From: Macrostomum lignano
Lineage: Eukaryota
Direction: 5' to 3'
Assembly: GCA_002269645.1 (NCBI GenBank)
Contig: NIVC01001838.1
Span: 1-64,000 of the forward strand
DNA length: 64,000 bases
The position numbers were made by a program, and so were the translations under genes. Positions 1 to 19,543 of this stretch are shown here, in pieces; position 1 is the first letter of the stretch, and the number at the start of each line of letters is the position of its first letter. Under the pieces are notes generated by a model that saw only the letters and a program-made list of their open reading frames with translations, did no database searches and was not told where the DNA came from.

Positions 1-125
1 GGATTCTGGTGTGGCCTACAGTGAGGCCTGGGATTCTGGTGTGGCCTACAGGTGAGGCCCCCCCTGGGATTCTAGTGTGGCCTACAGGTGAGGCCTGGAT
101 TCTGGTGTGGCCTACAGGTGAGGCC
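1..125 (+). repeat. About 30-bp intronic tandem repeat (ggattctggtgtggcctacaggtgaggcct)
   Basis: About 4 visible units upstream of the ANAPC4 acceptor at 134. Confidence 0.9.
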
Positions 126-134
126 TTGTTGCAG

Positions 135-3100
135 ATTGAGCAATGCGGAACCAACCCAACTCCAAGCCAGCTGGCCATTTCTTCTTGAACCCAGCGACGG
201 ACGGCTGCGGCACCTCAGCCTGGAGGATGGCAGCGTGCTGCACGAGGACTGGCTGACCGCGCCGGCAGGACAGCGGCTGGCGACTCAGCCAACGAGGGCC
301 CGGCGCTGTGCAGCCACTGGCCTGCTGGCAAATCGACAGTTCACCGAGCGCGTGACTCGGGCTGGCGAGGCTCTGCCGGTCTTTGGCCGACCTGCTCGGC
401 GGTGCATCGTCCGGCGCTTCGTCATCGTCTTCGACGTCGACAACTGGCGGCGGCGGCGTCGTCGACTGGACGGCATCGCGTCGAATCGAGCGTCAGCTGA
501 GCTGCTGGCAGTGGCCAGCCGCCTGTGGATTCACACTGCTGCTAGCCTACGGCATCTGCCGGCTGTGCCGACTGTCGCTTGACCAGCTGTGCCCCGGCGC
601 CTGTGTCCGGAGCAGTACCGGCCAGTGTCTGTGCTGGTGTCGGACAATCTGGCCAGGGTTAGCTTGCTGGCTAGCCGGAGGGCCGGCAGCAGGCCGTGCT
701 GCAGTTCGACACGGGCCTGGCCGAGGCGGGACGCTACGAGAGAGTCAGGCGGGTGGCGCTGACCGTGGTGCAGCTGACCCAGCTGACTGCCGGACTGCGG
801 CGCTGTCTGAAGGAGATGACCGAGTGCTGGGAGGACTCGGTTAGTGCTGGGTTGGGAAGGGGAGCAAATTTAACCTCGAGTTCGAGACCTCGCTTTACTA
901 ATCATCCAAGTTTTTGGATTCTGCGTCTCTGAAGCAATTTTTTTATAATTCCAGATCCCCAGGTTGTTCTTCTGAAAACAAGGTTAATAATATCCTTTGA
1001 ATCCTAGGTAATCTTTCGTGCCCTTGTTAATCCTCCCAATCCTTGGTTAATCCTTCCAATCCTTGGTTAATCCTTCCAATCCTTGGTTAATCCCTCTAAT
1101 CCTTGGTTAATCCCTCTAATCCTTGATTAATCCCTCTAATCCTTGGTTAATCCTTCCAATCCTTGGATAATCCCTCTAATCCTTGGTTAATCCTTCCAAT
1201 CCTTGGTTAATCCCTCCAATCCTTGGTTAATCCTCCTAATCCTTGGTTAATCCCTCTAATCCTTGATTAATCCTTCCAATCCTTGGTTAATCCCTCTAAT
1301 CCTTGGTTAATCCTTCTAATCCTTGGTTAATCCCTCTAATCCTTGATTAATCCTTCCAATCCTTGGTTAATCCTTCCAATCCTTGGTTAATTCTTCCAAT
1401 CATTCGTTAATCCCTCTAATCCTTGGTTAATCCTTCGAATCCTTGGATAATCCCTCTAATCCTTGTTAATCCTCCTAATCCTTGTTAATCCCTCTAATCC
1501 TTGATTAATCCTTCCAATCCTTGGTTAATCCTCTAATCCTTGGTTAATCCTTCAATCCTTGGTTAATCCCTCTAATCCTTGATTAATCCTTCCAATCCTT
1601 GGTTAATCCTTCCAATCCTTGGTTAATTCTTCCAATCATTCGTTAATCCCTCTAATCCTTGGTTAATCCTTCGAATCCTTGGATAATCCCTCTAATCCTT
1701 AATTAATCCTTCCAATCCTTGGTTAATCCCTCTAATCCTTGATTAATCCTTCCAATCCTTGATTAATCCCTCTAATCCTTGGTTAATCCTTCCAATCCTT
1801 GGTTAATCCCTCTAATCCTTGATTAATCCTTCCAATCCTTGGTTAATCCTTCCAATCCTTGGTTAATTCTTCCAATCATTCGTTAATCCCTCTAATCCTT
1901 GGTTAATCCTTCGAATCCTTGGATAATCCCTCTAATCCTTAATTAATCCTTCCAATCCTTGGTTAATCCCTCTAATCCTTGATTAATCCTTCCAATCCTT
2001 GGTTAATCCCTCTAATCCTTGATTAATCCTTCCAATCCTTGGTTAATCCTTCCAATCCTTGGTTAATCCCTCTAATCCTTGGTTAATCCTTCGAATCCTT
2101 GGATAATCCCTCTAATCCTTGATTAATCCTTCCAATCCTTGGTTAATCCCTCTAATCCTTGATTAATCCTTCCAATCCTTGGTTAATCCCTCTAATCCTT
2201 GGTTAATCCTTCCAATCCTTGGTTAATCCTTCTAATCCTTGGTTAATCCTTCTTATCATTGGTTAATCATCATAATCCCAGATCCCCAACTAAACCAAAA
2301 GCTCCAAACCCAAACGCTCAGGTGCACGAGCTGGACCAAAAGTTCGCCGACTACAGCAAAGACAGAGACGAATACGCATTGGCAATGGGCGAACCGGAGT
2401 GGCAGCTGCGCACGGACCTGATGGCGCTGCTGCTCACCGGACATTGCCACGCGAAATTCCGCGAATTCCTGTGCGAAGGCCTGTCCCGGGCCGGGCTGGT
2501 CCGCATCGGCCGCGGCATCGAGACCAGCCTGTGCTCCGTGCAGCGGCACAATGCCTGCCAGCTGCAGACTCTGCTGTTCGCCTTGATTTTCCACCTGGCC
2601 GAGCTGGCCGACTGCGCCGCTACCGGCGTCGCCGATCTGGGCAAAGGCGATGACGAAGTCGATGAGGAAGGCGGAGAGAGCGGCGACGAAGGCGAGGACG
2701 ATCTGGGCGAAAGGCGTCTCGAAGCCGAGGCGAGCGACGACGATGGCGAGCTTGCAGAAACTGGGAACGGCGACGCCCAGCTTGGTGAGAGACTACTATT
2801 AGTAGCTAATTGGAATGTGTGAGTTAAATGTATAGGATTTACACCGTAGCAACAAAGATTTCCCTAAAGCAACGGAGAATTTCGCCATAGTAATAGAGCA
2901 CTTCTCCCTAGCAACACAACTTTTCGCCATAGCAACAGATGTTTCCTACATAGCAACAGTTTTTCGTCATAGCAACAAGACTTTTCTCCCTAGCAACACA
3001 GCTTTTCTCCATAGCAAGAGCTTTTCTCCATAGCAACAGATGTTTCCTTCATAGCAACAGAGTTTTTCTCCATAGCAAGAGCTTTTCTCCATAGCAACAG

Positions 3101-4793
3101 AGGTTGTCACTGTAGCAACAGTGCTGCTTACTTCATAGAAGCAGTGGTTTTTGCACTTCAATTTTGTACATGCGAAGTTTGTTAACGTTCACGTAAAGAT
3201 TATACTTTAACTGTTATTCATAATTGACCGCAATGTCGGCCCAATTTCTTAGAAAGCATCCTTTATTCACGCCTGTCATCCTCTCCTCTACGCAGGCGAG
3301 CTCAGCCGCCGCCGGGCCGCCGACGCGCTGACCTACGCCGGCAGCGCCCTGGCCAAGTCCCTCGAGCTCGGCTCAGTAATCGAGCGCACCAGAGACAGCC
3401 TGCGCGCCTTCTGCGAATGGCTCTACGTGCAAATCCTGCGCCTATCTAAGGAGGCCGTGCCGCGCGCGCTCCAGCGCACCACCGTGCAGCGGCGCCGGCT
3501 AGTGATCGACTTTATTCGACACCAATTGGCCGACGGCGCCGCCACTGGGGGGCAGCGCCGATTCCGACTCGAGTTGGTGGGACAGTACCTGGCCGACGAG
3601 CCGCTGGCCTCCGTGCCCGACTGCCCGACCGTCTGGCAGCAGGTGCTGGAGCGGCATCTTCAGCGGGAGGCTTGGACTAGCGGGCATCGGCGGCAGCGGC
3701 GCCTGTTGCGCGCTTGCACGCTGGTGCGCCCGGACACGGAGGCTTCGCTGGCGCAGTGTCTGGAGCGCCTGTGCGACCGGGTTGACGCCGCCTGCCGGCT
3801 GGTTGAGCCGCGCCGGGTTCGCCTGCTGACAGAGCCGCCTGTGCAGCCGGTGTCCGGTCTGCGACCGCTGGCTCAAGGATTCATAGGCAGACAGGTGAGC
3901 AAGACCTGATGCTGAACATCGCTTTAATAATGGAAATCGAGTCCAGGACCTCGCTTTAATATGGGAATCGAGTCTAGGGACTCTCGCTTTAATATGGGAA
4001 TCGAGTCTACGACCTCTCGCTTTAATAGGGGAATCGAGTCTAGGACCTCTAGCTTTAATAGGGAAATCGAGTCCAGGACCTCTCGCTTTAATAATGGAAA
4101 TCGAGTCCAGGACCTCTCGCTTTAATATGGGATATCTAGTTCAGGCGTTTTAAGTCTCATTTTTTTCATTAAAATCGAGTCCACGACCTCTCTGTTCTAA
4201 TAAAAACCATATCCAACCCTCAGGCGCTGTACCACGCGCTGCTTCTGCACCCGGACGGCTGCACCGGCCTGCTGTTCCGCCAGGGCCCCGACGGTTGGTG
4301 CGGCCTTCGGTTTCGCTGCTCTTCCGACAGCGACGGCGCCCTCAAATTGGTGGACGCCTGCCAGCTGGACGCCAAGCAGTTCGCCTGTCTGCTGGCCGGG
4401 CCAGAAGGCGCGTCGGCCACGTCTTCACTTGTCGTACTGCCGCTGGCCGCCTTCAACGAGGCCGATTGGTCGCCGCCAACGGCGTCCCCGGAGTCGGCAG
4501 CCGCCGGCCTCAATGATTCGTCGATCGTCGAATTGGCCGATCGGCTGGGCGAGCGACTTCGCGCCGACAATCTGCCTGGCTGCGGCATCGCTGTCGCAGC
4601 TGAGCGCCGCCTGATGGTCTCCGTGCTGTTCGCCTGCCACCGACGGCTGCGCGTCTGCCTGCTGGAGCCCTTCAGCGAGGACGACGACGACGATGAAGAA
4701 GGCGGGGCGGCAGACGATGCCGACCGGGACGAAGAGGACCACGTCGCGAACGTTTCCGCAATGTCGGCAACGGCGCCAATGGAACAGAACTAA
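135..4793 (+). CDS. ANAPC4: Anaphase-promoting complex subunit 4, 5'-partial. Exons about 135-839 (several frameshifts), 2322-2784, 3296-3894, 4224-4793
   Basis: Segments resemble human APC4: FTLLLAYGICRL (IELYAYGMFKI), LKEMTECWEDS-VHELDQKF (MCEAWEEILMQMDSRL), SVIERTRDSLRAFCEWLYVQILRL (QVIDSSMKNFKAFFRWLYVAMLRM), FRLELVGQYLADE (FNVERVGQYLKDE), RRLRVCLLE followed by an acidic tail. GT-AG introns with matching phases. AATAAA near 4898. Acidic insertion at about 2644-2784. Confidence 0.9.
1023..2270 (+). repeat. 20-bp intronic minisatellite (taatccttggttaatccYtc) with a 240-bp higher-order repeat
   Basis: Directly visible. The variant ttcttccaatcattcg recurs at 1391, 1627 and 1867. Confidence 0.97.
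2846..3115 (+). repeat. Degenerate intronic repeat, about 22-25 bp, with a CATAGCAAC core
   Basis: Repeated (c/t)agcaac cores separated by ttttct-like spacers. Confidence 0.8.
3920..4190 (+). repeat. About 36-bp intronic tandem repeat (tcgctttaata..ggaatcgagtc.aggacctc)
   Basis: About 7 units visible. Confidence 0.9.
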
Positions 4794-5116
4794 TTAATAT
4801 CTCTTTTATGCTACTTAATTTCCACACTATTAGTAGCATGGTGTGAAAATAACATTTTGTCAGTAAAGTCGCATTTTGTCAGTGCAAAATATACAAATAA
4901 ACGACTGAACAAGCTTATTGAAAACGTCAATGCTGTTTTACTTATAAAACATATGCAACAGATGCTGTTAAAGTTTGACTGCTTTTATTAATCATTAATG
5001 TAATTATTGTTGAACATGACGAACATGGGTATGGGTGACCAAGTAATGTTTTTACTAATGGATAAGCAGACGACAGTCCAAATGAATGCAGAAACAAAGC
5101 AGGGGTTGCCACGCGG

Positions 5117-6130
5117 TCAGGCCGAGCTGATGTTGAACCGGGCCGCTCGCAGCTGCAGCTTCTCCTCGTTGGTTGGCGGCAGGTTGAACCGATCGGCGCG
5201 CGCCTTCAGCCTGGCAGCCTCGGCGTCCGCCTCAGCGGCCGGCTTGGCCAGCCCGAATCGCTCCGCCCGGATGCGCAGCCGCTCCGCCTCCGCTGTCGAC
5301 GAAGCTGCGGCGGTGGTGGCGGCGGCGGCTGGAGCGGCTCCGCTGGATGCGGCAGCGAGGCCGAACCGCTCGGCCCGCTTGCGCTTTCGCTCTTCGAGCT
5401 CCTCGGCGCTCGCGCCATCGCCACCGCTTGCTCCGATGCCGAATCGCTCGGCGCGCAGGGCCTTCCGCTTCTCCATGTCTTCGGCGGAGATCCCGTCGCC
5501 GCCGCCTCCGGTGCCAAATCGTTCAGCGCGTAGGGCCTTTCGCTTCTCGACATCGTCAGCTGAGGCGCCGGCGCCGAATCGTTCGGCGCGCAGAGCTTTG
5601 CGCTTCTCCATCTCGTCGTTGGTGGCGGCAGCAGCGGCGCCGAATCGCTTGGCTCGCAGGGCCAGCAGCTCAGCTTCGCTCGGCTTGCTTGCCGCTGCAG
5701 GCTTCGGCGGAGAGGCGGCCGGAGGAGCGGCGGTTTCCGGAGCAGCAGCGGCAGCGGCGGCGGCCCCAGCCGGCTGGGTGAGTCGGACTTTCTTAGCTGA
5801 GGAGGCGGCCTCGCTGTTGGCCGTAGCGGGTGCCGCCGCGCCTTCGCTAGCAGCGGGTTTCGAAGCAGCGGGAGCAGCAGCAGCAGCCGCTGGAGCCGCC
5901 AGCTTCAATTTTAACGGCGGCACCACAGCCGGTTGCGGGGCTGACGTTATGGCGTCCCCTTCCAGCAGGCTGTCTTCGGCCCGCTTGACCAGCAATTCAT
6001 GAAGCCGCTCGACCAGCTCCTTCTTTGAGCCCGTGACTGGCAGCTCGGCCGCTTTGCACTGCTCTTTGAGCTCCTTCAGTTTCATCCGACTCAAATCTTC
6101 AACGCTCGGTACGTCGGTCGATTCGGACAT
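5117..6130 (-). CDS. SARNP: SAP domain-containing ribonucleoprotein (SARNP/CIP29/Tho1 family), 337 aa from ATG 6130
   Basis: N-terminal SAP motif LSRMKLKELKEQCKAAELPVTGSKKELVERL, then repeated RAxRF(G/N) motifs typical of Tho1/SARNP. Minus-strand AATAAA at about 4984-4989. Confidence 0.9.
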   Translation of the reverse strand: MSESTDVPSVEDLSRMKLKELKEQCKAAELPVTGSKKELVERLHELLVKRAEDSLLEGDAITSAPQPAVVPPLKLKLAAPAAAAAAPAASKPAASEGAAAPATANSEAASSAKKVRLTQPAGAAAAAAAAPETAAPPAASPPKPAAASKPSEAELLALRAKRFGAAAAATNDEMEKRKALRAERFGAGASADDVEKRKALRAERFGTGGGGDGISAEDMEKRKALRAERFGIGASGGDGASAEELEERKRKRAERFGLAAASSGAAPAAAATTAAASSTAEAERLRIRAERFGLAKPAAEADAEAARLKARADRFNLPPTNEEKLQLRAARFNISSA

Positions 6131-6194
6131 GACTGGCTGGATCTGGCTGCAACCGGGTTGGAGGTTGGTCATTGCGTCATTCACTCAGGCACAT

Positions 6195-6950
6195 TCACTA
6201 AGAGAAGAGGCAGATTCACTAAGAGAAGAGGCAGATTCACTAAGAGAAGAGGCAGATTCACTAAGAGAAGAGACAGATTCACTAAGAGAAGAGACAGATT
6301 CACTAAGAGAAGAGGCAGATTCACTAAGAGAAGAGGCAGATTCACTAAGAGAAGAGGCAGATTCACTAAGAGAAGAGACAGATTCACTAAGAGAAGAGGC
6401 AGATTCACTAAGAGAAGAGGCAGATTCACTAAGAGAAGAGGCAGATTCACTAAGAGAAGAGACAGACTCACTAAGAGAAGAGGCAGATTCACTAAGAGAA
6501 GAGGCAGATTCACTAAGAGAAGAGACAGATTCACTAAGAGAAGAGGCAGATTCACTAAGAGAAGAGGCAGATTCACTAAGAGAAGAGGCAGATTCACTAA
6601 GAGAAGAGGCAGATTCACTAAGAGAAGAGACAGATTCACTAAGAGAAGAGGCAGATTCACAAAGTAGAAGAGGCAGATTCACTAAGAGAAGAGGCAGATT
6701 CACTAAGAGAAGAGACAGATTCACTAAGAGAAGAGGCAGATTCACTAAGAGTAGAGGCAGATTTACAAAGGGAAGAGGCAGATTCACTAAGAGTAGAGGC
6801 AGATTTACAAAGGGAAGAGGCAGATTCACTAAGAGAAGAGGCAGATTCACTAAGAGTAGAGGCAGATTTACAAAGGGAAGAGGCAGACTCACTAAGGGAA
6901 GAGGCAGATTCACTAAGAGTAGAGGCAGATTTACAAAGGGAAGAGGCAGA
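6195..6950. repeat. 21-bp tandem repeat (gaggcagattcactaagagaa) between EIF3F and SARNP
   Basis: Directly visible, changing to an alternating 42-bp pattern after about 6740. Confidence 0.97.
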
Positions 6951-7311
6951 TTCTTAATAGAGCAGTTTGAAGGAGAGAAATGACAGTGGATCCTTGCCAG
7001 TATAAAACTAATAATAAAAACTTTAAGCAATAACGCAACAATATCACCGAATTCATAGTTCCTTTCCGAACTTCGAGCCGATCAGAAAGCTCGAATAAAA
7101 CAGTTTATTTCTTGTTTTAATTTCTGTCGGTTTTTTGTTTCTGTTTGTAATCGAATGCTAACACTGTTTAAACACCGTTTGCAAACGCGCGCACACACTA
7201 TAGCGGTTCTGTTGTTCATATTTTCTTATAATGAGTCACATTGACGCCACTCCGAACCAACCCACACCGAAACGGAAAACACAGCTGGCAGGCGGGGGGG
7301 GGTTAACAGTG

Positions 7312-9072
7312 TCACATAGCTATTAGCTTCTCGTTGAAGTCGAGATGGGTTCGAATCATTGTGGTCAGGTAGGACAGCATCAGCAGGTCCTTAGTTGATG
7401 AGTTCACCATATCGTCGAATGTCTCTTTGTCCAATTTGGGCACCGTGTTGACCAGCTGGGCTAGGGATCTGCCCAGCTGCGGGTCCGCCTTCTGCTGGTC
7501 AGTTAGCACGGAGTCGACGTAGGCAATCACCTGCGGGTGCGTTTGTCAGGGAGTTGTGGCCATTAGAGGCGATTCTCATGCTGGGTTTGGGCGATTCTCA
7601 TGCTGGGTTTGGGGCGATTCTCATGCTGGGTTTGGGGCGATTCTTATGCTGGGTTTGGGGCGATTCTCATGCTGGGTTTGGGGCGATTCTCATGCTGGAT
7701 TCTGGGGGATTCTCATGCTGGATTCTGGGGGATTATCATGCTGGATTCTGGGGGATTCTCATGCTGGGTTTGGGGCGATTCTCATGCTGGGTTTGGGGCG
7801 ATTCTCATGCTGGGTTTGGGGCGATTCTCATGCTGGGTTTGGGGCGATTCTCATGCTGGGTTTGGGGCGATTCTTATGCTGGGTTTGAAGTGATTCTCAT
7901 GCTGGGTTTGGGGCGATTCTCATGCTGGATTCAGAGAGGTTATTTGGTTTGGATTAAATAGCAGCAATCTTATTTAAACGGCGCATGAACCCACCTGCTC
8001 CAGCATTCGAGACAGATTCCTGGCAGCCGAACGCACATTGCCAACATCGTCTAGCAGGCTGACGGCACGTTTAATATTGTTCCTGCCGCTCTGCATCACC
8101 CGACAGGCGGCGGCTTCGTCATCGTAGGCCTCGTTGCGAAGCTCGATTGGCACAAACATTGTGCCCTTGGTCTTGCCTGGAACGCCGAACGTGGTGCTGA
8201 CGAAAGCTCGAAATTGCATTCTTGGCCGGCTGTCGTCAACCTCGGCGTTAACTAGCATGTGTACAGGCCTGCGGCATTCTCGCGAGTAATAGTCGTGTAT
8301 GAGCACCGATGGAGCTCGGATGCTGGAGCCGGTGCTGAACCAGCCTACAATAGACTCGCCGGGATTGGCTTTGCGATGCAATTCGAACATGGCCCGCTGG
8401 AATTCTATGTCAATGGCGGCGCTGTCCTCGGATTCGCTGTGCGGCACAGAGAAACAATTTGTAGCCGTCACCTGGCCTTTGCTGTCGCTGCTGCCTGCTC
8501 GGTTGAGTAGTTGGTCTGACTGTTATCGATTCCATCCTATCTTCTGTCTGTCTGTCTGTCTGTCTGCCTGCCTGCCTGCCTGTGTGTCTGCCTGCCTGCC
8601 TGTGTGTCTGTCTGTGTGTCTGTCTGCCTGTCTGTCTGTGTGTCTGTCTGTCTGCCTGCCTGCCTGTCTGTCTGTCTGTCTGTCTGTCTGTCTGCCTGCC
8701 TGCCTGACTGTCTGTCTGTCTGTCTGTGTGTCTGTCTGTGTGTCTGTCTGTGTGTCTGTCTGCCTGCCTGCCTGTCTGTCTGTGTGTCTGTCTGTCTGTC
8801 TGTCTGTCTGCCTGTCTGTCTGCTTCAGTGCGTCTGTCTGTCTGTGTGTCTGTCTGTCTGTCTGTCCGTCTGTTGGTCTGTCTGTACATTATCCCATCTA
8901 TCTGTCCCGTCTCCTGACTGCCTTCCCGCATGCACAGTGAGCACTCACCTAGCAGAGTGCCAATCACTTGCAGCTGGTTCTCTGGCCGGCGCTCATAAAA
9001 GTCAATAATTTGTAACAGCACAGTGGGGTGCACCCGCAGCTGCAGAGCCCCTGAACTACTGCTTACTTTAGC
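7312..9072 (-). CDS. EIF3F: Eukaryotic translation initiation factor 3 subunit F. Exons 9072-8949, 8494-7995, 7530-7312; no ATG in these exons
   Basis: MPN-domain motifs RVHPTVLLQIIDFYERR, VIGTLLG, TNCFSVPHSES, IVGWFSTG, SVLIHDYYSRE and C-terminal DLLMLSYLTTM..NEKL match eIF3f. Exon lengths 124+500+219 = 843 nt keep the frame. Confidence 0.93.
7565..7932. repeat. 23-bp intronic tandem repeat (gcgattctcatgctgggtttggg)
   Basis: Directly visible, in the last EIF3F intron. Confidence 0.96.
8545..8885. repeat. (CTGT)n-type microsatellite in an EIF3F intron
   Basis: Directly visible. Confidence 0.97.
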
Positions 9073-9745
9073 CTGAAAAAGTTTTTAGTAGTATATATGC
9101 TTGATTTGAATGTAATATTAAAAATCGCATAAAGGTTAGTGTGTTTGATACTATATACAAAAATCTTACATATTACAATAGGGGTCAAATCATAAAAATA
9201 CAATCAATTACAATTTTTTTACACAATTTTACAAATTTGGATATTTAAATTTGACATAAATTTTTGGTATATCCTTGCATTTTTTCTAATATACAAAAAC
9301 AATCCAAAAAAGATCAATACAAGTGTGGCCTAGCCCAATATTATACTTTTATATTTTTATATAGTTTTTATAGGTTAGGACATAGAGATAGCCTATAGCA
9401 TATAGATAGCACATAGTGCACATATACATGTGCAATAATTGGCCAAGTCAGCCAATCTGGCTGACCAATTTGGCGGCCAACCAAGGTAAGTTGCAAAAAT
9501 GCCCACCCGAATAAATACCCAAGTAATACTAAGTAGATAACAAGGCATTTTGTCTTAATAGGATAGTCACAGTTACTCCTGCCATTCACCCAAAGCTGCT
9601 TAATTCTGCTTTAGGGTTTTTTACATGTAAGTCACATTTTTGGCCAAAAACGTTCTTTATTAATGTTTATTCTCTATTCTCTATTAATTCTTTATTATGA
9701 TAGAAAAAAGATATTTATATAGATACCTATCTGGTACACTTTGAA

Positions 9746-9925
9746 CAAGGGCGGATCCAGAGAGGAGGCCAAGGGGGCCATGGCCCCCCCCCCTTAACTA
9801 TGGCCAAAGAAATTTTGATCATACTTTTTTGACCTGCTACTATGCCAGGTCTATTTTCCAATATAGGGTTGTAATGCTTGGTATAGCTTGGCCCCCTTCT
9901 CAAAAATTTTCTGGATCCACACCTG
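9746..9925. mobile_element. hAT-type MITE, about 180 bp
   Basis: Imperfect TIRs CAAGGGCGGATCCAG / CTGGATCCACACCTG and an 8-bp TSD actttgaa / actttaaa (7 of 8 match). Confidence 0.75.
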
Positions 9926-10665
9926 ACTTTAAAATATGTTAGTATACTTAGAATTCCTCATATTCATTACAATTGCACTTTTTAGTATAATATGGTAGTG
10001 TTAAACTAATAAGACTAAGGGACTAAGGGGTAGTATTAAACTAATAACTAAACTAAATAGTATCATCTTTATATGCTTTGAAACCTTAAATTTGAAAGCT
10101 AGTCATGAAACCCCCAAAGGCTTAATGCACAAAATATATAATGATGTTCCCTTATCATTTATTATTCTTTGCTCCCTTTTCTTTATATTGCTTGCCTTGG
10201 CTTAAGTTCTAAATTCCAAGGACTTAAAAGTTCCTTTTATTTTTTGAAATTGGCAATATTTATTCATCTCTAACCCTTTTTAGATGCTAATCACTTTGTC
10301 AATTAGCATTTTGTCAAATGGTTGACTATTTGGTAAGGGTAGCAGTATTTGCAATTGACAAAGTGACTATTTGAATTTTGGCAAGGGTAGTAGTATTTGC
10401 AATTGATGAAGTAACCTTGTTTTTAATTATATTTACTTTGATACCAAATGTATATAGAGAATTGAGCTTGAAAAAAGTATTAATTTGTGATTATAAAAGG
10501 TTAAATTCATATTTAGTTATTTAGATTTATTCATAAATTGTTTATCATTGTTTATTATTCTTTTTAAAAAAACATTTATACTTTATTGTAATTCAATGTT
10601 GAAATTCAAGTTTTAATTTGAATTAAAATCATTTAAAAAATTCAAACATAGGCCTATTACAGTAT

Positions 10666-11804
10666 TAGTGTTCCGCCGCCGCGAGTTTCGACCTCCGTAA
10701 CCGTAACCGTAGCCGTAAGAAAGAAGCAACTTCCGTAGCCGAATTTTGCCGTCATTACGGGCTAAAAAAAGTCCGTAACCGTAATTTGCCGTAACCGTAG
10801 CCGTAATGTATAACAAAAATTGATATTTTTGCATGAAAAGTAGGGCAGACAGAAAAGGACAGATAAAAAGGATAAAAGGATAGCAATAAAACCTACTTGT
10901 TGTTCGTTCATGCATTAATATTCATTTATTTTTTCGTAAATATAATATCTTATCAAAGTATTCTATAGCATTGTTGTATGCAATTGTGTGCTTGGTGCCT
11001 TTTTCAGTTTTCTGTGTCGTGATTCTGTTTTGTTTCGCTACAATATGAATATATGACTGACGTGCCAAGGTCAATGTGTATGTTTAATATCATTAAATAA
11101 ATATATGAATTTGTTCAAATAAAACTGCTTCAAAATTTCCGATGACTAAGAAATTGCATGTTACATTTTTTCATTTTCATTTTATTGCATTGTCTATTGT
11201 ATTGTCTTCTTTGGTTTCAATCAATTTTCAATCATAATTCATATTCTTATCCTATTAGTATTTATTTAGTATTTCCTTATTAATATTCTTTCATCCTTAT
11301 CCTCATAATCTAAATCTAATATCCTATTTTTATGCTAAGGAGCTAAATGCTACATATGGCTAAGAAATAAGAATGCCAGATTCTTAGTCTCTTGTAGGCT
11401 TTGACTGGCTCTCTCTGTCTCGCTGCTATCATGCTATCGCTATGCTATGCTATGCCGTATGCCTAATGAGAAAATTCGTGGAAAAATTTGTTTTTCATTT
11501 TCAAGAAGTTTCGTAGATATTTAGAAACTTAACAAATGTAAAAAATAATAATAACTAGTAAAACAAAATGAAAACTGGTTGAAGTTGATATAAAAAAATT
11601 CTTTTATAACACTAAACAGTTAAAAATAAATAATTTTTGTTACGGCTACCAATTATGGCAAGTCTAGAAAAATCTCCGTAATCCGTAACCGTAACCGTAA
11701 GCTCAAAATATGTCCGTAACCGTAATCCGTAATGAAAACACGGCTTCAAAAGTGTCGTAGCCGTAATTTGCCGTAGCCGTAGCCGTAATTACGGCGGAAC
11801 ACTA
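10666..11804. mobile_element. Non-autonomous DNA transposon, probably hAT, with subterminal (CCGTAA/CCGTAG)n repeats
   Basis: 13-bp TIR TAGTGTTCCGCCG at both ends and CCGTAR repeats inside both ends. TSD unclear: aggcctat follows the right end and also occurs 8 bp before the left end. Confidence 0.75.
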
Positions 11805-12952
11805 AGGCCTATGTTATATATTTTATTTGGAAACAACACAACATAGTAAGGCCTATGTTGCACTTTGAAATTAATTAAGGGGGCTAACCTGCTTAATCTG
11901 TTTCATTTATATAAAAAAGTTAACAGAAGAAATTTTGGCATAGATACAGATGCAGCTATCAACATATATACATAATACAATTATACTACAAATATACTAC
12001 AATACTATATATAGGCCTATACATAACATAATCAAGGGCATAGCCAAAAGGGGGGATAAAGGCCTAAGGGCATGTTCCCCGGAAGGGGAATTTTTTACTG
12101 CCTTTGTATTTTGCTTCCATTGCTTCCATTAGAGATAGGGCCTATATTTAACATGTCATTAGCATCAGGCCCTTGGTCTATAAATACAATAAGACATCAT
12201 TCAATTAACTATTATTTCAATCTATTGTAGCATAGGCCTAGACCTACAGTTATACATACGCCTTACGCCTAATCTCCCACAAACCTTATCAGATGAAACT
12301 ATTACTATTAGGCCTACGCATTAACTAATTCTATCCCATGTGTATACTGTGTAGTCTATGGAATACAACTGTTATTTTGAGTTTTTAACTCTTTATGGCT
12401 TAATTTTTGTATCCTTCAGGCAAACACAGGCAGAATTGCCAGGTGACGTCGTCGACATCCTTGCGCTACACACACAGCCAAAAATTAAAATTTCGTTCAA
12501 AGGCAATTTCTCTCTTCAATCGTGTTATTAAGGAAAAAGCCAGTTAATGTGTAAAAATCATTCGTTTTAATTAGATTTAGTTTTTTATTTTTATATCCTA
12601 ATAAACAGCCTTTTAATTTTTGGTTAAATCTCCAAAAACGACGTTTATTTTTTGTTAAGCTGACTACATCATTTAAAAAAATTGGTTTACAATAATTGGA
12701 TTGATTATTTTCACCTATATCTGCCCAGAAATTCTACTATTAAGTAACACCCCACGAATATGTTCTGTAAAACTCATTTAAAAAACAATTTAAAAAAATC
12801 TGTATTTACAGCTGCGTACCCTACAAACTCGTTGCCCCTGACAGGCTAGTGACATGTACGACTCCTTCTCATGACTGATGTATGAGGCTACCCGAGCTAA
12901 CTGTTGTGTATTGCAAAGGCATGCGATGCGTAGGGGTAGTTCGGGGACAGCG

Positions 12953-13048
12953 TTTCTAGAAACTTCCACCGCGGACTTGTTTACGCATAGTTCCAGAAGT
13001 TTCCTTCCCCGGTCTTTCTAGAACTTTCCTTCCCCGCGTGCATAAATA
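12953..13048 (+). promoter_or_regulatory. Three perfect heat-shock elements plus a TATA-like box
   Basis: TTCtaGAAacTTC (12954-12966), TTCcaGAAgtTTC (12991-13003), TTCtaGAActTTC (13016-13028), then CATAAATA at 13041-13048. Confidence 0.75.
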
Positions 13049-13515
13049 TACGAGCCGCCCTCCTATTGGCCAAGCCCTCTTTTGGTGCCACTGAGCGCCC
13101 GGATAATTATCTATCTTGTTTCTGCGTTCGTTAATTCAACAACAGAACACTAACAACATGTTTTTTTCTGGGGCAGAAGCAAGTTTTAGCAGCCCAATTT
13201 AATTTCAATAAAGTGTACCTAATTTGCTAATAGCGGACAAAATCAGATACATGTACACATGTACATGTATGCTGGACAGGGGTGTCGGAATCGGGGGGGG
13301 GGGGGGGCTGAAGCCCCCTCCCACTTTTTGCCATGATCCAGCAAGTGCCCTTTTTGAATTTTAAACAAGTGTCGACTGGTTTTGGGCTCTGGCTCTTCTG
13401 AGTCTTGGAAGCTAGTGGGGTATCAGCTGATATAATACCCGTAGTTCATGTTGTTCTCAATCTCCATTCCACTACAGTTTTTATCTACTGTGCATAAGCC
13501 TTGGTGCTTTTAGTG

Positions 13516-14574
13516 CATTGGTCAGCAAACTTTTCACCTAAAGGGCCAGATTGAGAACCTAGCGTGGCGCAATGACTGCCCTTCTGGGTTTGCTTCGCTG
13601 GGCCCCCGTAAGCAAAATGCGCCCATGAGTCCCTGACTGCAGGCAAGAGAAGGGAGAGAGGATAGGGAATAGAGTAGAGAATTATATGAGCGTAGGAGAA
13701 AGGAGAGGCAAGGAGAGGAGAAGGAAAGGAAAGACAAGATGAGAGGAGAGAGGAGAGGAGAGAAGAGAGGAGAGAGAGGGGAGGAGATGAGAGGAAAGAG
13801 AGGAGAGGGGAGGGGAGGAGAGGAGAGAATAGGAGAGGAGAAGGAGAAGGAAAGGAAAGACAAGATGAGAGGAGAGAGGAGAGGAGAGAAGAGAGGAGAG
13901 AAGAGAGGAGAGAAGAGAGGAGAGAAGAGAGGAGAGGAGAGGAGAGGAGAGGAGAGAAGAGGAGAGAGGAGAGGTGAAGGAATAAAGGAGAAGAGAGTAG
14001 ACGAGAAGAGAGATAAAATTGGAGAGGGGAGATGGACGAGGAGAGGAGAGACGAAATAGGAGAGAGAGGAGAGAAGAGGGAAGGGAGAAGAGAATGGAGA
14101 GAAAAGGGAGAGGAGAGAGGTGAGGAGATGAAAGGAAAGAAAGCGAGGAAAGGAGAGGGGAGGAGAGGAGAGGAAGAGGAGAGGAAAGAAAAGATGAGAG
14201 GAGAGAGGAGAGGAGAGAATTGAGAGGAGAGGAGAGAGGAGAGGAGATGAGAGAGGTGAGGAGAGTTGAGAGGAGAGGAGATGAGAGAGTTGATGAGAGG
14301 AGGGAAGAGAGGAGAGAAGAGGAGAGGAGAGGAAAGGAGAGAGGAGAGGAGAGAGGTGAGGAGAGGAAAGGAGAGAGGAGAGGAGATAGGTGAGGAGATG
14401 AGAGGAGAAGAGAGAGGAGAGGAGAGAATATGAGAGAATATGAGAAGAGAGCTGAGAAGAGACAAACATCGAGCGGGCCGGATTGCTATTGTGAAGATTT
14501 AAAGGATCTGAGGGCCGGATAGAGAGGCTTTGCGGGCCACATTTGGCCCTCAGGCCGGAGTTTGCCAACCCCTG
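13516..14574. mobile_element. hAT/Charlie-like MITE with an internal GA-rich expansion (about 13650-14465)
   Basis: Ends CATTGGTCAGCAAACTTTT..AAAGGGCCAGAT and GGCCGGAGTTTGCCAACCCCTG resemble Charlie/MER58 termini. 8-bp TSD ttttagtg / ttttagta with central TA. Confidence 0.85.
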
Positions 14575-15250
14575 TTTTAGTATTCAGCCCTTTCACTTTT
14601 GGCGTCTCTGATCGAAATTCCGAGTGCGCCGCAATCCCAAGACCTCAACCGCTGCTGGCGCTGCAACCAAAATTGCTAAAATGCCGTCAGCTAAAAGAAT
14701 AAAGAGACAGTGCCAAGAGGAACTGAAGGATTTTACTATATAAATTGATAATGCAATTTTCGCAATTAGTTGCGCGATGTTTGAATCAGTTAAAAATTCA
14801 AACATTTTCAGACTTTTGGCCACTTCCAACTCAAAATTTAATATCGGCCTGGTTGTCACAATTTCACAAACTGATATAACAGCAGGAGTTTGGGTGCCTT
14901 TAGATTTAAAGAAATTATTTGCAATGTGCCCTCCCATCAATAGCCCCCCCCCACTTGCAACTTTCCGGTTGACATCATACGACTTTCAGGAGGCAAACTT
15001 TCCCGGCCCTGGCAACTTTCCGACTGGCAACTTCAGCTGGCAACTTCCAGGTTGGCAACTCTCCCACGCCAAACATGCAGTACATGTGCATACGCGCGTG
15101 TGTACATGTACGTACTGAACTAAAGTACATGTACATGTACATATACTGCTGTCTGTCGCGTCGTCGCGGGGGGACAGGGGCTGGTCCCTCTAGTAAAGAA
15201 TGGGGGGGGACATGACAATTATGCTTGTCCCCCCTCCACCCCACCTTAAT

Positions 15251-15740
15251 TGTGGCGCGTTTTGGAAATCAATTTTGTTTCAGGACGCTAAAAAGGAACT
15301 GTGGCGCTGAAATATGAAGTGCCTTCGGCGCTAAATGCGTGTTCTGCGACGTTAAAATGAGCTCAACAACACCGGCCGATTCTCAAAATACATGTACTGT
15401 ATACATGTATGTAGCTTTTCAAAACATGTACATTGGAATTTAGTCATGTACATGTAAAATTCTTGGCTCTGCTGCCCCCCCAGCATAAAATCCATGGCGG
15501 CCCACCTTGTGGCCCGTTGTGGAAATCAATAATTTTGTTTCCGGACCGTGCTAAAATTTAGCACCTGCGGCGCTAAAATGATAGTGCCTTCCATTCGGCG
15601 TTAAAAAAATAAGTGCGAAGACAACAACCGACTCTCAATATGTAGATTCTCAAATCATATGTGTAGCAATTTAGTCATGTATACATGAAATTCTTGGCTT
15701 TGTCTCCCCACCAAAAAATCCATGGGGACGACGCCCCCCC
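15251..15740 (-). mobile_element. Two diverged tandem copies of a MITE-like repeat, related to the copy at about 28600
   Basis: About 15251-15505 and 15510-15740 share ggaaatcaat..ttttgttt, ggcgct.aaat, atttagtcatgta and aaaatccatgg. Their ends match the reverse complement of caggggcgtcgccatggatttt at 28600. Confidence 0.6.
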
Positions 15741-16098
15741 CGTGTGTAATGTACCATCGTTACACATTACATTGTACAATTTGCGCACATACATTTACAT
15801 GCATAATATATTGCTCTGATGGTAGCATAATAACTAATATACAGGTGGAAGTTTTGTGAGAGACACACTAGTACATGTTGTACATGTATGTACAAAATAT
15901 GTACATGTACGTACAATGTACAGCGCAGGAGTGCTCTCTATTTTTGATCTATACATTGCGGTGAAAACAATGAAATGTATTTTTACATAGCAACAGAATA
16001 AAGCTTGCTGCATCGAGATGTACATGTATGTTTAACCCCACATATTTACACGACAAAATATACCACCACAGAATGTATACTACTGTACGGGTCAAAAC

Positions 16099-16114
16099 GG
16101 CCCTTTTCAGGGCC
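16099..16114 (+). pseudogene. Orphan histone 3' stem-loop with no histone CDS upstream
   Basis: Perfect GGCCCTTTTCAGGGCC. Its downstream flank (acatttaat..aa..ctta.actc, ggtct.gttaaaat) is homologous to the H3 3' flank. Confidence 0.8.
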
Positions 16115-16558
16115 ACTACATTTAATAAAGGCTTATACTCAATACTCATCGCTGCATGGACCTTGCAATCACTCTCGTTAGTTGGGATATGGTCTAGTTA
16201 AAATAAGTACACTGTACACCGCTTTTGTGTAATTCTATGGCATAATATGGAATTACATGTATGTTGTAGTAGGAAGACATGTAGCTCGTAGATATATTTT
16301 TGTCGTCATTGAATTGTGGCGAATATAAAATATATTATATGATACAATTTCTGACAATTAGGCTTATCGACCGGCTTCTCAACTCTCTTGACCTGAGTTT
16401 GAACTTGAAGTGGAAGACCAATTCACAATTTTCCTTTCCGAACTTATACCGATTACCGAGTCGAGTGTTCAACAACTTACCCTCCACTGGACTTTTTCAG
16501 CATAAGTTCTGGTCATTCTACTTAAAGTAGTAGTATAAATACAGCTGAAGAAAAATGA

Positions 16559-17143
<585 letters not shown>

Positions 17144-17225
17144 GTTGCCGCGTTAGCAGCTAAGTGACTAGATCAGCAGTAATCCTGCTGAGTTAAGCTG
17201 TCGATAGAAACCTGAACGTTAAAAC

Positions 17226-17241
17226 GGCCCTTTTCAGGGCC
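17226..17241 (+). terminator. Histone mRNA 3' stem-loop of H3
   Basis: GGCCCT-TTTC-AGGGCC preceded by AAAAC and followed by ACCAC. Confidence 0.97.
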
Positions 17242-19162
17242 ACCACATTTAATGAAATCTTACTCGTCTGGGGTGTGGTCTGGTTAAAATGAGAGGAATT
17301 ATTAGTACGAATCGTACTATGACCCTTCACTTACACTGATACTGAAGCCGGTCAAGCAGAACAAAAGCATTATGCCAATTACAAGCACGTAGCTCTACTC
17401 TTGCATTTGTGTATATAAATATACGATTTCAAACTACACCTTTCAAGCACAATTTTATTTTTAGGCTAACTTAGTTACTGCCAACAATATTGTAAATAGG
17501 TTGTGTGGATGATTTTCATTCGCTTGTATTGTATAGTAAAGTGCTTGTATATTCTGCAGCTTGCTATGTTAGGTCAGCATCTTTTAAGGTAGTTTCAGCA
17601 TGACTAATATATCCAAATTTTCTAAATCCATAATATTGAAAATTAGTCTAAAGTCAACTCTCTGAGGTCTAACAGTAGTTAAAACAAGCAAGGGCAGGAC
17701 TAAATACATTTTGCAATGCGTACAATAATAAGTCACTGACTCTTACAATAGTATACATTAAAGTTAAACTAATATTTAAACACCGTACTGTACTAAATCG
17801 TTCGAAGCTTTTCACATTGTCTGTTCCGTTTTCAGAATCGGTTCCAGAACCGTGTTCTAGTTCTGGTTGAGATTAGATCGAGAAAATTTCTCGATCTGTT
17901 GTCATGTTTACAGATGTTTACAGTAAAATATATTTAAAATCGTCAATTTTTATTACTTTTATATTATTAATCTGTTTTTTTTTCATATCCAAGACTGGCA
18001 AGAGGGAACAAAGACAAGGAAAGACAAATTATAAAGACCGACAAACAAAATGGGTTCGAACTCGTCGAAGCTTTTCATTTTCCTACCGCGATTCTGGTTT
18101 CTGGAATCGGAATTATTCTGGTTCTGGGACTGGAACCAATCTTCGTGAAAAGCATATTTTTGAGTTTAAGTTTTGCAACTCAAAAGTTCAATCCCAAAAT
18201 TTACAAAGTACATTTATTACCGTAATAGGCCTTGGAAATAAAATGCTGTTCAACTTATTGTTTACAATCTTAAACTGGTAGTTAAAGAGAAATCTACTAC
18301 TTAGTCTAAACTCAAAAGCCACGGTAAGTTGCCTGTTCAGTCTATTACACTACACATTCATTCGGCAGGCAGCAACCACTCGCCTGCTACAGAATGATTC
18401 TGTTTTGACAATTGCCGATGTATAGAATGCATCGGGTCATGTCCCCAGTGTCCCCCTGGGCTACGCCCCTGTGCACATTCAAATGGAAGTGATTCTTCCC
18501 CAGGACTGAGTACTCGTCGTATTAAACTCGCAGTACGCGTACATTACGACTACCCTGAATACATGTGTATGCATGTACATGTATGCTTTAGCATGTACCT
18601 GCAATAACTTATTAAAGGTTATTAATTAGAGTGTTTTGTTTAATTCAAATAAAAATAGCATTTGTTTATTCAATTTTATTGAATGAATCTGGCGACATTC
18701 GACAAGACAACTTAACCAAGTTAACTACTAAATCCCCAGATTAATTGGGTCATTAATTAGCTTTATTAGTAACTTCCGACTTGTGATGGGGTGAACTTGC
18801 CCATCAAATTCTGTTTTTTTACTAATGGAAGTTAAACGCAGTACATGTAAAACAGAGAGCATTCAAGGCAGAATAGTTGAATAGATTTATATTTAAGTTG
18901 GATTGCAGAAATAAACGTGCATTTAAATTAAGTTTAACAACTTGCATGTAAGCTTACTGTAAGTAGAAAGAGACGAACATTAAATTGTATTTAATCAGAT
19001 GATTCTCTTTCAGCCAATAAGAGAGCTGGTCGTTGCCTAGGCCGTTGCTAAGAAAATTTCTGTGTTGGATTCGTATATAAATGTTAGGCCTGTCGCCTTA
19101 GTTCTTAAATCAACGATTTCACTTCATCTCTAGTCTTTAAATTCAATTCAGAAGAATTCAAC

Positions 19163-19543
19163 ATGTCTGGACGTGGCAAGGGTGGCAAGGCCAGGAGCAA
19201 GGCAAAGACTCGCTCGTCTCGCGCGGGACTGCAATTCCCGGTCGGCCGTATTCACCGTCTGCTGCGTAAGGGCAACTACGCTGAGCGCGTTGGTGCCGGC
19301 GCTCCGGTGTACCTGGCCGCTGTGCTGGAGTACCTGGCTGCCGAGGTGCTCGAGCTGGCTGGCAACGCTGCTCGTGACAACAAGAAGACTAGGATCATCC
19401 CACGTCATCTTCAGCTGGCCATCCGCAACGACGAGGAGCTGAACAAGCTGCTGAGCGGCGTCACCATCGCTCAGGGCGGCGTTCTGCCCAACATCCAGGC
19501 CGTGCTGCTGCCTAAGAAGACAAAGGTGCCCGGCAAGGCCTAA
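19163..19543 (+). CDS. H2A: Histone H2A, canonical, intronless
   Basis: SGRGKGGK...[19 protein letters not shown]...[16 protein letters not shown], with CCAAT (about 19013) and TATATAAA (about 19073) upstream. Confidence 0.99.

What the first reader, a model, noticed from the sequence alone, without database searches (positions are those of the whole stretch)
9030..9130. EIF3F has no start codon and may take its AUG from a spliced leader
Seen: the first coding exon starts in phase 0 right after tttttcag (9072) with AKVSSSSGALQLRVHP and has no Met. Adding one Met gives 281 aa, a normal invertebrate eIF3f length. I saw no ATG|GT micro-exon in the AT-rich 9.1-13 kb upstream. Established: flatworm spliced leaders end in AUG, which can act as the initiator (shown in Schistosoma). 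Inference: SL-supplied initiation of a core translation factor.
Basis: partly seen in the sequence, partly recalled or inferred. Interest (0 to 1): 0.7.

Follow-up and report, generated by a model that had tools for sequence, protein, structure and literature searches.

The report
Spliced leader supplies eIF3f start codon
In the flatworm Macrostomum lignano the eIF3f gene has no start codon of its own and almost certainly gets its AUG from the trans-spliced leader RNA, a mechanism already well documented in flatworms, so this is a sound but ordinary example.

Summary
On the minus strand the acceptor tttttcag (9080-9073) is followed in phase 0 by AKVSSSS.... An in-frame TAA lies four codons upstream, and the first Met is residue 77, inside the MPN domain.

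The window is Macrostomum lignano (assembly Mlig_3_7, contig NIVC01001838.1). My three-exon model equals GenBank PAA63483/PAA75367 (280 aa, named "partial").

The species' single 35-nt spliced leader (SL) ends ...TTGCATG. Joined at 9072 it reads AUG-GCU-AAA, giving MAKVSSSS (281 aa). That N-terminus matches orthologues, most of which start "MA".

There is indirect transcript evidence. The assembly was polished with RNA-seq reads. In a near-identical second copy (NIVC01000888.1) the four bases before this junction are overwritten (TTTTCAG to TTGCATG, the SL tail). The neighbouring SAP-domain gene's acceptor shows the same in two copies. Cis-splice acceptors are untouched.

No upstream cis ATG exon stands out. 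The only candidate with a consensus donor lies inside an oppositely oriented histone cluster.

However, SL-AUG initiation is established in Schistosoma and Echinococcus and has been noted for Macrostomum. This is a new member of a known kind, of modest interest.

The parts
9073..9080 (-). 3' splice acceptor tttttcag used for SL trans-splicing. The last six bases, TTTCAG, fit the M. lignano trans-splice acceptor motif [T/C]TNCAG.
   Evidence: sequence; motif from PMC8629364; the SL tail TTGCATG replaces these bases in copy L002.
9085..9087 (-). In-frame TAA four codons upstream of the junction. With no ATG between it and the junction, the exon cannot be extended upstream to a genomic start codon.
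8949..9072 (-). eIF3f coding exon 1 (124 nt, phase 0 at its first base, no ATG). It encodes AKVSSSSGALQLRVHPTVLLQIIDFYERRPENQLQVIGTLL plus the first base of a Gly codon. The donor is GTGAGT.
   Evidence: It is 100% identical to M. lignano eIF3f.
8495..8948 (-). Intron 1 (GT...AG), mostly a (TCTG)n microsatellite at 8543-8885.
7995..8494 (-). eIF3f coding exon 2 (500 nt). The acceptor is ccgagcag and the donor is GTGGGT.
   Evidence: The acceptor is the same in all three copies.
7531..7994 (-). Intron 2, containing a 23-bp tandem repeat (x15.7) at 7568-7928.
7312..7530 (-). eIF3f coding exon 3 up to the stop codon TGA (7314-7312).
7104..7109 (-). AATAAA, the likely polyadenylation signal of eIF3f, about 200 nt after the stop codon.
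   Evidence: sequence only; the function is inferred.
6146..6153 (-). Trans-splice acceptor ggttgcag (6153-6147) and first exon base (6146) of the downstream SAP-domain gene. Its own ATG is at 6130-6128. This second junction shows SL-tail overwrites in copies L001 and L002.

Best explanation
The eIF3f pre-mRNA of Macrostomum lignano is SL trans-spliced at the acceptor tttttcag. The 35-nt leader CGGTCTCTTACTGCGAAGACTCAATTTATTGCATG is joined to base 9072 and everything upstream (the outron) is discarded. The mature mRNA then has a 32-nt 5' UTR made only of leader sequence. The leader's terminal AUG is read as the initiator, followed by GCU AAA GUA..., giving a 281-aa eIF3f that begins MAKVSSSS. 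Shown here: the gene structure, the lack of a genomic start codon, the reading frame, the fit to the acceptor motif, the fit of the N-terminus to orthologues, and an SL-tail imprint at the junction in a second genomic copy. Inferred: that the SL-joined form is the main mRNA, and that ribosomes start at the SL AUG. The second inference rests on analogy with Schistosoma (Cheng et al. 2006) and Echinococcus.
For: (1) The sequence shows acceptor plus phase-0 exon, an in-frame TAA at 9087-9085, and a first Met at residue 77 inside the conserved MPN domain.
(2) The organism is M. lignano: window 1-19072 is 100% identical to NIVC01001838.1.
(3) The SL ends in ATG. It is the only SL reported for the species and is attached to about 30% of genes (PMC8629364).
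(4) SL plus exon 1 reads MAKVSSSSGALQLRVHP. Most aligned orthologues start MA, with 7-24 residues before the conserved (R/K)VHP block; here there are 13.
(5) The published trans-splice acceptor motif [T/C]TNCAG is met by TTTCAG.
(6) The GenBank CDS starts exactly at the first base after the AG in all three copies. The same annotation starts the SAP-domain and ANAPC4 genes 1 nt (frame adjustment) after a CAG| acceptor. The pipeline behind it sets the boundaries of trans-spliced mRNAs from SL-read peaks (PMC5730564).
(7) Copy L002 has TTGCATG| where the others have TTTTCAG|. These are four consecutive changes at positions -5 to -2, out of only 11 differences in 600 nt. At the SAP-domain gene's acceptor, L002 has gTGCATG| and L001 has ttCATG|, against ttgCAG| in the window. 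All cis acceptors are unchanged.
(8) The assembly was polished with Pilon using STAR-mapped RNA-seq. These overwrites are therefore best read as traces of reads carrying ...GCATG joined to these exons.
(9) Use of the SL AUG as initiator is documented in flatworms and noted for Macrostomum.
Against: I saw no raw read, cDNA or RACE product. The junction evidence is an inferred polishing artefact plus annotation boundaries. Only one of three copies carries the imprint at eIF3f. No poly(A)-type imprint was seen at the 3' end. A minor cis-spliced isoform that uses the same acceptor cannot be excluded, because flatworm acceptors are often shared between cis- and trans-splicing. The 7.6 kb upstream holds 134 phase-0 ATG...GT candidates, one of them with a consensus donor. 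There is no protein-level evidence for the start site.
Confidence: 0.88

Rival explanations
1. A genomic, cis-spliced upstream exon supplies the ATG, and exon 1 as seen here is really exon 2 of the main mRNA.
For: The acceptor is an ordinary AG acceptor. The 9073-17200 stretch contains 134 phase-0 ATG...|GT candidates and one with a GTAAGT donor (ATG at 16516, donor after 16481, peptide MTRTYAEKVQWR), which is intact in all three copies. In parasitic flatworms acceptors are often shared between cis- and trans-splicing.
Against: The candidates are not enriched over shuffled sequence: 134 against 109 +/- 16 for all donors, and 1 against 3.5 +/- 2.2 for GTRAG donors. The one consensus candidate lies between a histone H3 gene and a histone stem-loop on the opposite strand and would need a 7.4-kb intron. 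Conservation between copies says nothing, because the copies are 95-99% identical throughout. The GenBank model has no upstream coding exon in any copy. The SL-tail imprint shows that SL-joined reads exist at this junction. Orthologue N-termini need no extra residues.
Confidence: 0.05
2. The TTGCATG in copy L002 is real genomic sequence. That copy would have captured the SL's ATG (for example by cDNA-mediated gene conversion) and now starts translation from a genome-encoded ATG without trans-splicing. The window copy could then be a redundant copy.
For: L002 reads ...AAAAACTTTGCATGGCTAAAG, with an ATG directly in front of codon 2 and no AG acceptor.
Against: The assembly was polished with RNA-seq reads. 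The same kind of overwrite, to different depths (CATG or TGCATG), is found at the next gene's acceptor in two copies, where it creates no useful start codon. Only positions -5 to -2 are changed, and position -8 stays genomic. That fits mismatches tolerated at read ends better than conversion by a cDNA carrying 35 nt of SL. Even if real, this reading still requires an SL-eIF3f mRNA as the template, so it supports trans-splicing at this site.
Confidence: 0.04
3. The gene is not translated from this position. It is either a 5'-truncated pseudogene copy, or translation starts at a non-AUG codon or at the internal Met77.
For: No ATG is present in the first 76 codons.
Against: All three copies keep an intact 280-codon frame with canonical splice sites. 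Between copies the coding differences seen are two synonymous changes at the start of exon 2 and one conservative replacement, M121L. No other eIF3f was found for the species in the protein search. Starting at Met77 would remove invariant MPN-domain residues, including H16, G39-G43, N55-F57 and H61. The four codons between the TAA and the junction (AAA CTT TTT CAG) include no near-cognate start codon.
Confidence: 0.02

Closest known systems
Schistosoma mansoni / S. japonicum mRNAs that use the SL 3'-terminal AUG as initiator methionine (Cheng, Cohen, Ndegwa & Davis 2006, J Biol Chem 281:733; seen here only through citing papers)
   Same: The flatworm SL ends in AUG. The last 7 nt, TTGCATG, are identical in S. 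mansoni and M. lignano. The recipient exon starts in phase 0 with no AUG of its own, and the SL AUG is needed to obtain the conserved N-terminus.
   Different: The species is a free-living macrostomorph rather than a parasitic neodermatan. Initiation at the SL AUG has been shown experimentally in Schistosoma but is only inferred here. I could not see whether eIF3f is on the Schistosoma list.
Echinococcus granulosus SL-bearing cDNAs (PMC3510090)
   Same: [quoted passage not shown] For some, the SL AUG is required to match orthologue N-termini. SL-AUG use was conserved for 10 of 15 orthologues of the S. japonicum genes known to use it.
   Different: That study had cDNA evidence. Here the evidence comes from genome sequence, annotation boundaries and a polishing imprint.
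M. lignano SL trans-spliced genes as annotated by TBONE (Wudarski 2017; Ustyantsev & Berezikov 2021)
   Same: Same SL, same acceptor motif [T/C]TNCAG, a conserved housekeeping gene (the class in which trans-splicing is enriched), and likely operon membership together with the downstream trans-spliced SAP-domain gene.
   Different: Those papers do not analyse use of the SL AUG as a start codon. For most trans-spliced genes, including the two neighbours here, the gene has its own ATG and the SL AUG is out of frame.
slORFs in nematodes, Oikopleura and trypanosomes (slORFfinder, PMC9851317)
   Same: The reading frame begins inside the spliced leader.
   Different: Those leaders mostly supply near-cognate NUG codons and create alternative ORFs. 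Here a true AUG supplies the only start of the main, conserved ORF.

Membership tests
Flatworm mRNAs initiated at the SL 3'-terminal AUG | The organism has an SL RNA whose leader ends in AUG directly before the GU donor. | tested here: met
   The M. lignano SL is CGGTCTCTTACTGCGAAGACTCAATTTATTGCATG, followed by GTAAG in the 109-nt SL RNA gene (PMC8629364). The organism was identified. No SL RNA gene lies in the window itself.
Flatworm mRNAs initiated at the SL 3'-terminal AUG | The 5'-most exon starts at a 3' splice acceptor of the trans-splice type. | tested here: met
   tttttcag|G at 9080-9073|9072. TTTCAG fits [T/C]TNCAG.
Flatworm mRNAs initiated at the SL 3'-terminal AUG | Transcripts exist in which the SL is joined at that acceptor. 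| tested here: met
   The evidence is indirect. The SL tail is written over the acceptor in copy L002 of an assembly polished with RNA-seq, with the same effect at the next gene's acceptor and none at cis acceptors. The annotated 5' end lies exactly at the junction in all three copies. Raw reads were not available.
Flatworm mRNAs initiated at the SL 3'-terminal AUG | The SL AUG is in frame with the main ORF, with no stop codon between. | tested here: met
   SL plus CDS translates to MAKVSSSSGALQLRVHPTVL....
Flatworm mRNAs initiated at the SL 3'-terminal AUG | The SL AUG is required: there is no alternative in-frame AUG near the 5' end, and the N-terminus matches orthologues only if the SL AUG is used. 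| tested here: met
   TAA lies four codons upstream and the first Met is residue 77. The alignment with 15 metazoan eIF3f proteins is.
Flatworm mRNAs initiated at the SL 3'-terminal AUG | Ribosomes actually initiate at the SL AUG (protein or ribosome-profiling evidence). | not testable with these tools
   This needs Ribo-seq, N-terminomics or a reporter assay.
eIF3 subunit F (MPN/JAB plus MitMem_reg) | An MPN (PF01398) domain and a C-terminal PF13012 domain, with orthology to metazoan eIF3f. | tested here: met
   The model is 100% identical to the UniRef/NCBI M. lignano eIF3f, which carries PF01398 and PF13012. It is 40-51% identical over 95-98% of its length to named eIF3f proteins from molluscs, brachiopods, vertebrates and others.

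The most novel reading that the evidence does not exclude
The ATG in copy NIVC01000888.1 (TTGCATG|GCTAAAG) is real DNA, not a polishing artefact. That would mean a spliced-leader tail was copied back into the genome from an SL-eIF3f cDNA. It would give one paralogue a genome-encoded start codon and free it from trans-splicing, a snapshot of how genes might escape SL-AUG dependence.
Probability: 0.04. Interest if true: 0.6.

Novelty: new member of a known kind. Interest (0 to 1): 0.25.

Why it matters
This is a clean example of a gene that cannot make its conserved protein without SL trans-splicing, and it comes from an early-branching free-living flatworm that is a transgenic model organism. 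It extends SL-AUG initiation beyond the parasitic Neodermata. It also shows why trans-splicing is hard to lose once genes have given up their own start codon.

There are practical consequences. Gene predictors and databases mishandle this gene. GenBank names it partial, UniProt A0A1I8HHL5 starts at LFQ inside the acceptor, and another UniProt model is a 3785-aa fusion. Reporter or knock-in designs for this locus must take the SL-derived AUG into account. The Mlig_3_7 reference also appears to carry SL tails written over some trans-splice acceptors, which can mimic start codons and paralogue differences.

Tried and rejected
(1) I looked for a conserved upstream micro-exon by comparing the three genomic copies. 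This was uninformative because the copies are 95-99% identical across the whole 10 kb.

(2) I scanned 9073-17200 for phase-0 ATG...GT exons. There was no enrichment over shuffles, and the one GTRAG candidate sits inside an oppositely oriented histone cluster.

(3) I looked for SL-tail k-mers elsewhere in the window. The counts are at chance level, and only the two acceptor sites in L001 and L002 are convincing.

(4) I searched the window for an SL RNA gene and found none. Rfam found only two histone stem-loops.

(5) I searched papers and held supplements for Mlig006250 or EIF3F and found nothing. Cheng et al. 2006 is not held.

(6) I searched metagenome contigs for the exact SL-exon junction and got no hits.

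(7) I looked for poly(A)-tail overwrites at the eIF3f 3' end as a second kind of RNA-seq polishing imprint and found none.

(8) I rejected initiation at Met77, non-AUG initiation and a pseudogene; the reasons are given under the rival explanations.

(9) The "partial" label in GenBank is not itself specific evidence. The same annotation also extends the histone and SAP-domain CDSs 5' of their real ATGs. Only the position of the 5' end is informative.

Full report
**What is in the sequence.** The feature lies on the minus strand. Reading 5' to 3', the sequence is ...atatactactaaaaactttttcag|GCTAAAGTAAGCAGTAGTTCAGGG.... The exon starts at 9072 and translates in phase 0 to AKVSSSSGALQLRVHPTVLLQIIDFYERRPENQLQVIGTLLG, followed by a GTGAGT donor. 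Two more exons complete the gene. The coordinates are exon 1 at 9072-8949, exon 2 at 8494-7995, and exon 3 CDS at 7530-7312 with a TGA stop. All junctions are canonical GT/AG. The frame is closed by a TAA at 9087-9085, four codons upstream of the junction, and there is no ATG in between. The first Met of the 280-residue product is residue 77. The absence of an ATG|GT micro-exon between 9.1 and 13 kb also holds: the only ATGGT sites on this strand up to 17.2 kb are at 15757 and 17091.

**Source organism and gene.** The protein is 100% identical to eIF3 subunit F of Macrostomum lignano (PF01398 MPN/JAB plus PF13012). It is 40-51% identical to eIF3f of other metazoans. Window 1-19072 is 100% identical to GenBank contig NIVC01001838.1 of assembly GCA_002269645.1, Mlig_3_7. 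My model equals PAA63483/PAA75367 exactly. A second copy (PAA89681) differs only by M121L. Public models mishandle the 5' end. GenBank names the protein partial and starts it at AKV. UniProt A0A1I8HHL5 starts at LFQAKV, which reads back into the acceptor. A third model is a 3785-aa fusion.

**The spliced leader.** M. lignano has one reported SL, the 35-nt CGGTCTCTTACTGCGAAGACTCAATTTATTGCATG. It is found on about 30% of genes and comes from a 109-nt SL RNA gene with a GTAAG donor directly after the ATG (PMC8629364). The top motif at its trans-splice acceptors is [T/C]TNCAG, and TTTCAG here fits it. Joining the SL to 9072 gives ...UUGCAUG|GCUAAAGUA, which reads MAKVSSSS. In an alignment with 15 metazoan eIF3f proteins, most start MA and have 7-24 residues before the conserved (R/K)VHP block. 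The SL-initiated product has 13. Starting at Met77 would delete invariant MPN residues.

**Indirect transcript evidence found in the genome assembly.** Three near-identical genomic copies of the locus exist: L001 (NIVC01000142), L002 (NIVC01000888) and L003, which is the window. In L002 the acceptor reads ...AAAAACTTTGCATG|GCTAAAG instead of ...AAAAACTTTTTCAG|GCTAAAG. This is four consecutive substitutions at positions -5 to -2 that recreate the last seven bases of the SL. The two copies differ at only 11 positions in the surrounding 600 nt. The next gene downstream, a SAP-domain protein, shows the same effect at its first-exon acceptor. The window has ggttgCAG|CCAGATCC, L001 has ggttCATG| and L002 has ggTGCATG|. 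The cis acceptors of eIF3f exons 2 and 3 are unchanged in every copy.

The Methods of Wudarski et al. [quoted passage not shown] The simplest reading is that RNA-seq reads with a short SL overhang were aligned with mismatches and outvoted the genomic bases. The shallow, variable depth of the overwrite (3-4 bases, with position -8 still genomic) fits that better than a biological event. Either way, a molecule with ...GCATG joined to GCTAAAG must have existed. The fact that the same tail sits in front of two different genes is what defines a spliced leader.

**Annotation boundaries.** In this GenBank annotation the CDS starts are transcript 5' ends, frame-adjusted and left open at the 5' end. 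The H2A and H3 CDSs run upstream of their real ATG. The SAP-domain and ANAPC4 CDSs start one base after a CAG| acceptor. The eIF3f CDS starts exactly at the base after CAG| in all three copies. The pipeline behind the annotation (TBONE) sets the ends of trans-spliced mRNAs from peaks of SL-containing reads. Of the three neighbouring trans-spliced genes, only eIF3f lacks its own ATG. The other two have one 13-17 nt downstream of the junction, and there the SL AUG is out of frame.

**The rival: a cis-spliced ATG exon.** Between 9073 and 17200 there are 134 ATG-initiated open stretches that end in phase 0 at a GT, against 109 +/- 16 in shuffled sequence. Only one has a GTRAG donor, against 3.5 +/- 2.2 expected. 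That one (ATG at 16516, donor after 16481) lies between a histone H3 gene (16733-17143, plus strand) and a histone 3' stem-loop (16094-16139, plus strand). It is therefore inside a histone cluster of opposite orientation and 7.4 kb from the acceptor. It is intact in all copies, but so is almost everything else. A minor cis isoform cannot be excluded, because acceptor sharing between cis- and trans-splicing is common in parasitic flatworms. Nothing points to one here.

**Mechanism, and how much of it is shown.**
- Shown: the gene structure, the missing start codon, the frame, the motif fit, the N-terminal fit, the SL-tail imprint and the annotated 5' end.
- Inferred: the SL-joined mRNA is the main form, and the 43S complex starts at the SL AUG, 33 nt from the cap.

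The second inference rests on work in other flatworms. In S. mansoni the SL AUG is in frame in 28% of trans-spliced mRNAs and more than 40 cDNAs need it (Cheng et al. 2006, as summarised in PMC9851317). In E. granulosus 143 of 187 SL clusters were predicted full length using the SL ATG, and SL-AUG use is conserved across Neodermata (PMC3510090). All reported parasitic-flatworm SLs end in ATG (PMC12582326). The S. mansoni SL shares the terminal TTGCATG. Wiberg et al. [quoted passage not shown] I put 0.88 on this explanation.

**Novelty and score.** The mechanism is textbook for flatworms and is recognised in this genus. The locus is already annotated with its 5' end at the junction. No paper or held supplement that I could search names this gene. 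I therefore rate it a new member of a known kind, with modest interest (0.25).

The most novel reading left open is that the ATG in copy L002 is real, meaning a leader tail was copied back into the genome and gave one paralogue its own start codon. I give that about 4%. Genomic DNA reads would settle it.

**Searches that found nothing.** These were the search for an SL RNA gene in the window, the metagenome search for the junction, the look for a poly(A) imprint and the counts of SL-tail k-mers in the window.

Noticed in passing
L002 9996-9999 and 12911-12914; L001 13887-13889 (window equivalents 9077-9074 and 6151-6148): The Mlig_3_7 reference appears to carry spliced-leader tails (GCAT or CAT) written over the bases just upstream of trans-splice junctions. 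This is most likely a result of Pilon polishing with RNA-seq reads. The overwrites destroy the AG acceptor, can create false genomic ATGs, and look like differences between paralogues.
   Followed up: partly
window 6128-7109, minus strand: eIF3f and the downstream SAP-domain gene lie on the same strand and both appear to be trans-spliced. About 940 nt separate the eIF3f AATAAA from the next acceptor, and 767 nt of that is a 21-bp tandem repeat (6187-6953, x36.5). After subtracting the repeat they meet the published M. lignano operon criterion (under 1 kb).
   Followed up: partly
window 6146-6090, minus strand: On the SAP-domain mRNA the SL AUG is out of frame. It would open a 16-codon upstream ORF (MPDPASHVRIDRRTER*) that overlaps the gene's own AUG at 6130, a possible brake on its translation.
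   Followed up: no
window 16094-16139 (+), 16733-17143 (+), 17221-17267 (+), 19163-19543 (+): A histone cluster lies upstream of eIF3f in the opposite orientation: H3 with its 3' stem-loop, and H2A. The second Rfam histone stem-loop at 16094-16139 has no histone ORF in front of it, so it may be a remnant.
   Followed up: partly
window 8543-8885, 7568-7928 and 13694-14451: Both eIF3f introns are mostly repeat arrays: (TCTG)n x86 in intron 1 and a 23-bp unit x15.7 in intron 2. An AGGAG-rich low-complexity block of about 750 bp lies upstream. Array lengths differ between the genomic copies.
   Followed up: no
database entries for this gene: Public protein models are inconsistent. GenBank has a 280-aa protein named partial. 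UniProt A0A1I8HHL5 (283 aa) starts LFQAKV, translating the acceptor. UniProt A0A1I8H6C5 is a 3785-aa model that clusters with eIF3f and is probably a fusion of neighbouring genes.
   Followed up: no
L001 about 20557 and L002 about 19598, minus strand (outside the window): The annotated 5' end of ANAPC4 also sits one base after a cctcag| acceptor, with its own ATG 13 nt downstream and the SL AUG out of frame. Three adjacent genes therefore look trans-spliced, but only eIF3f depends on the SL AUG.
   Followed up: partly
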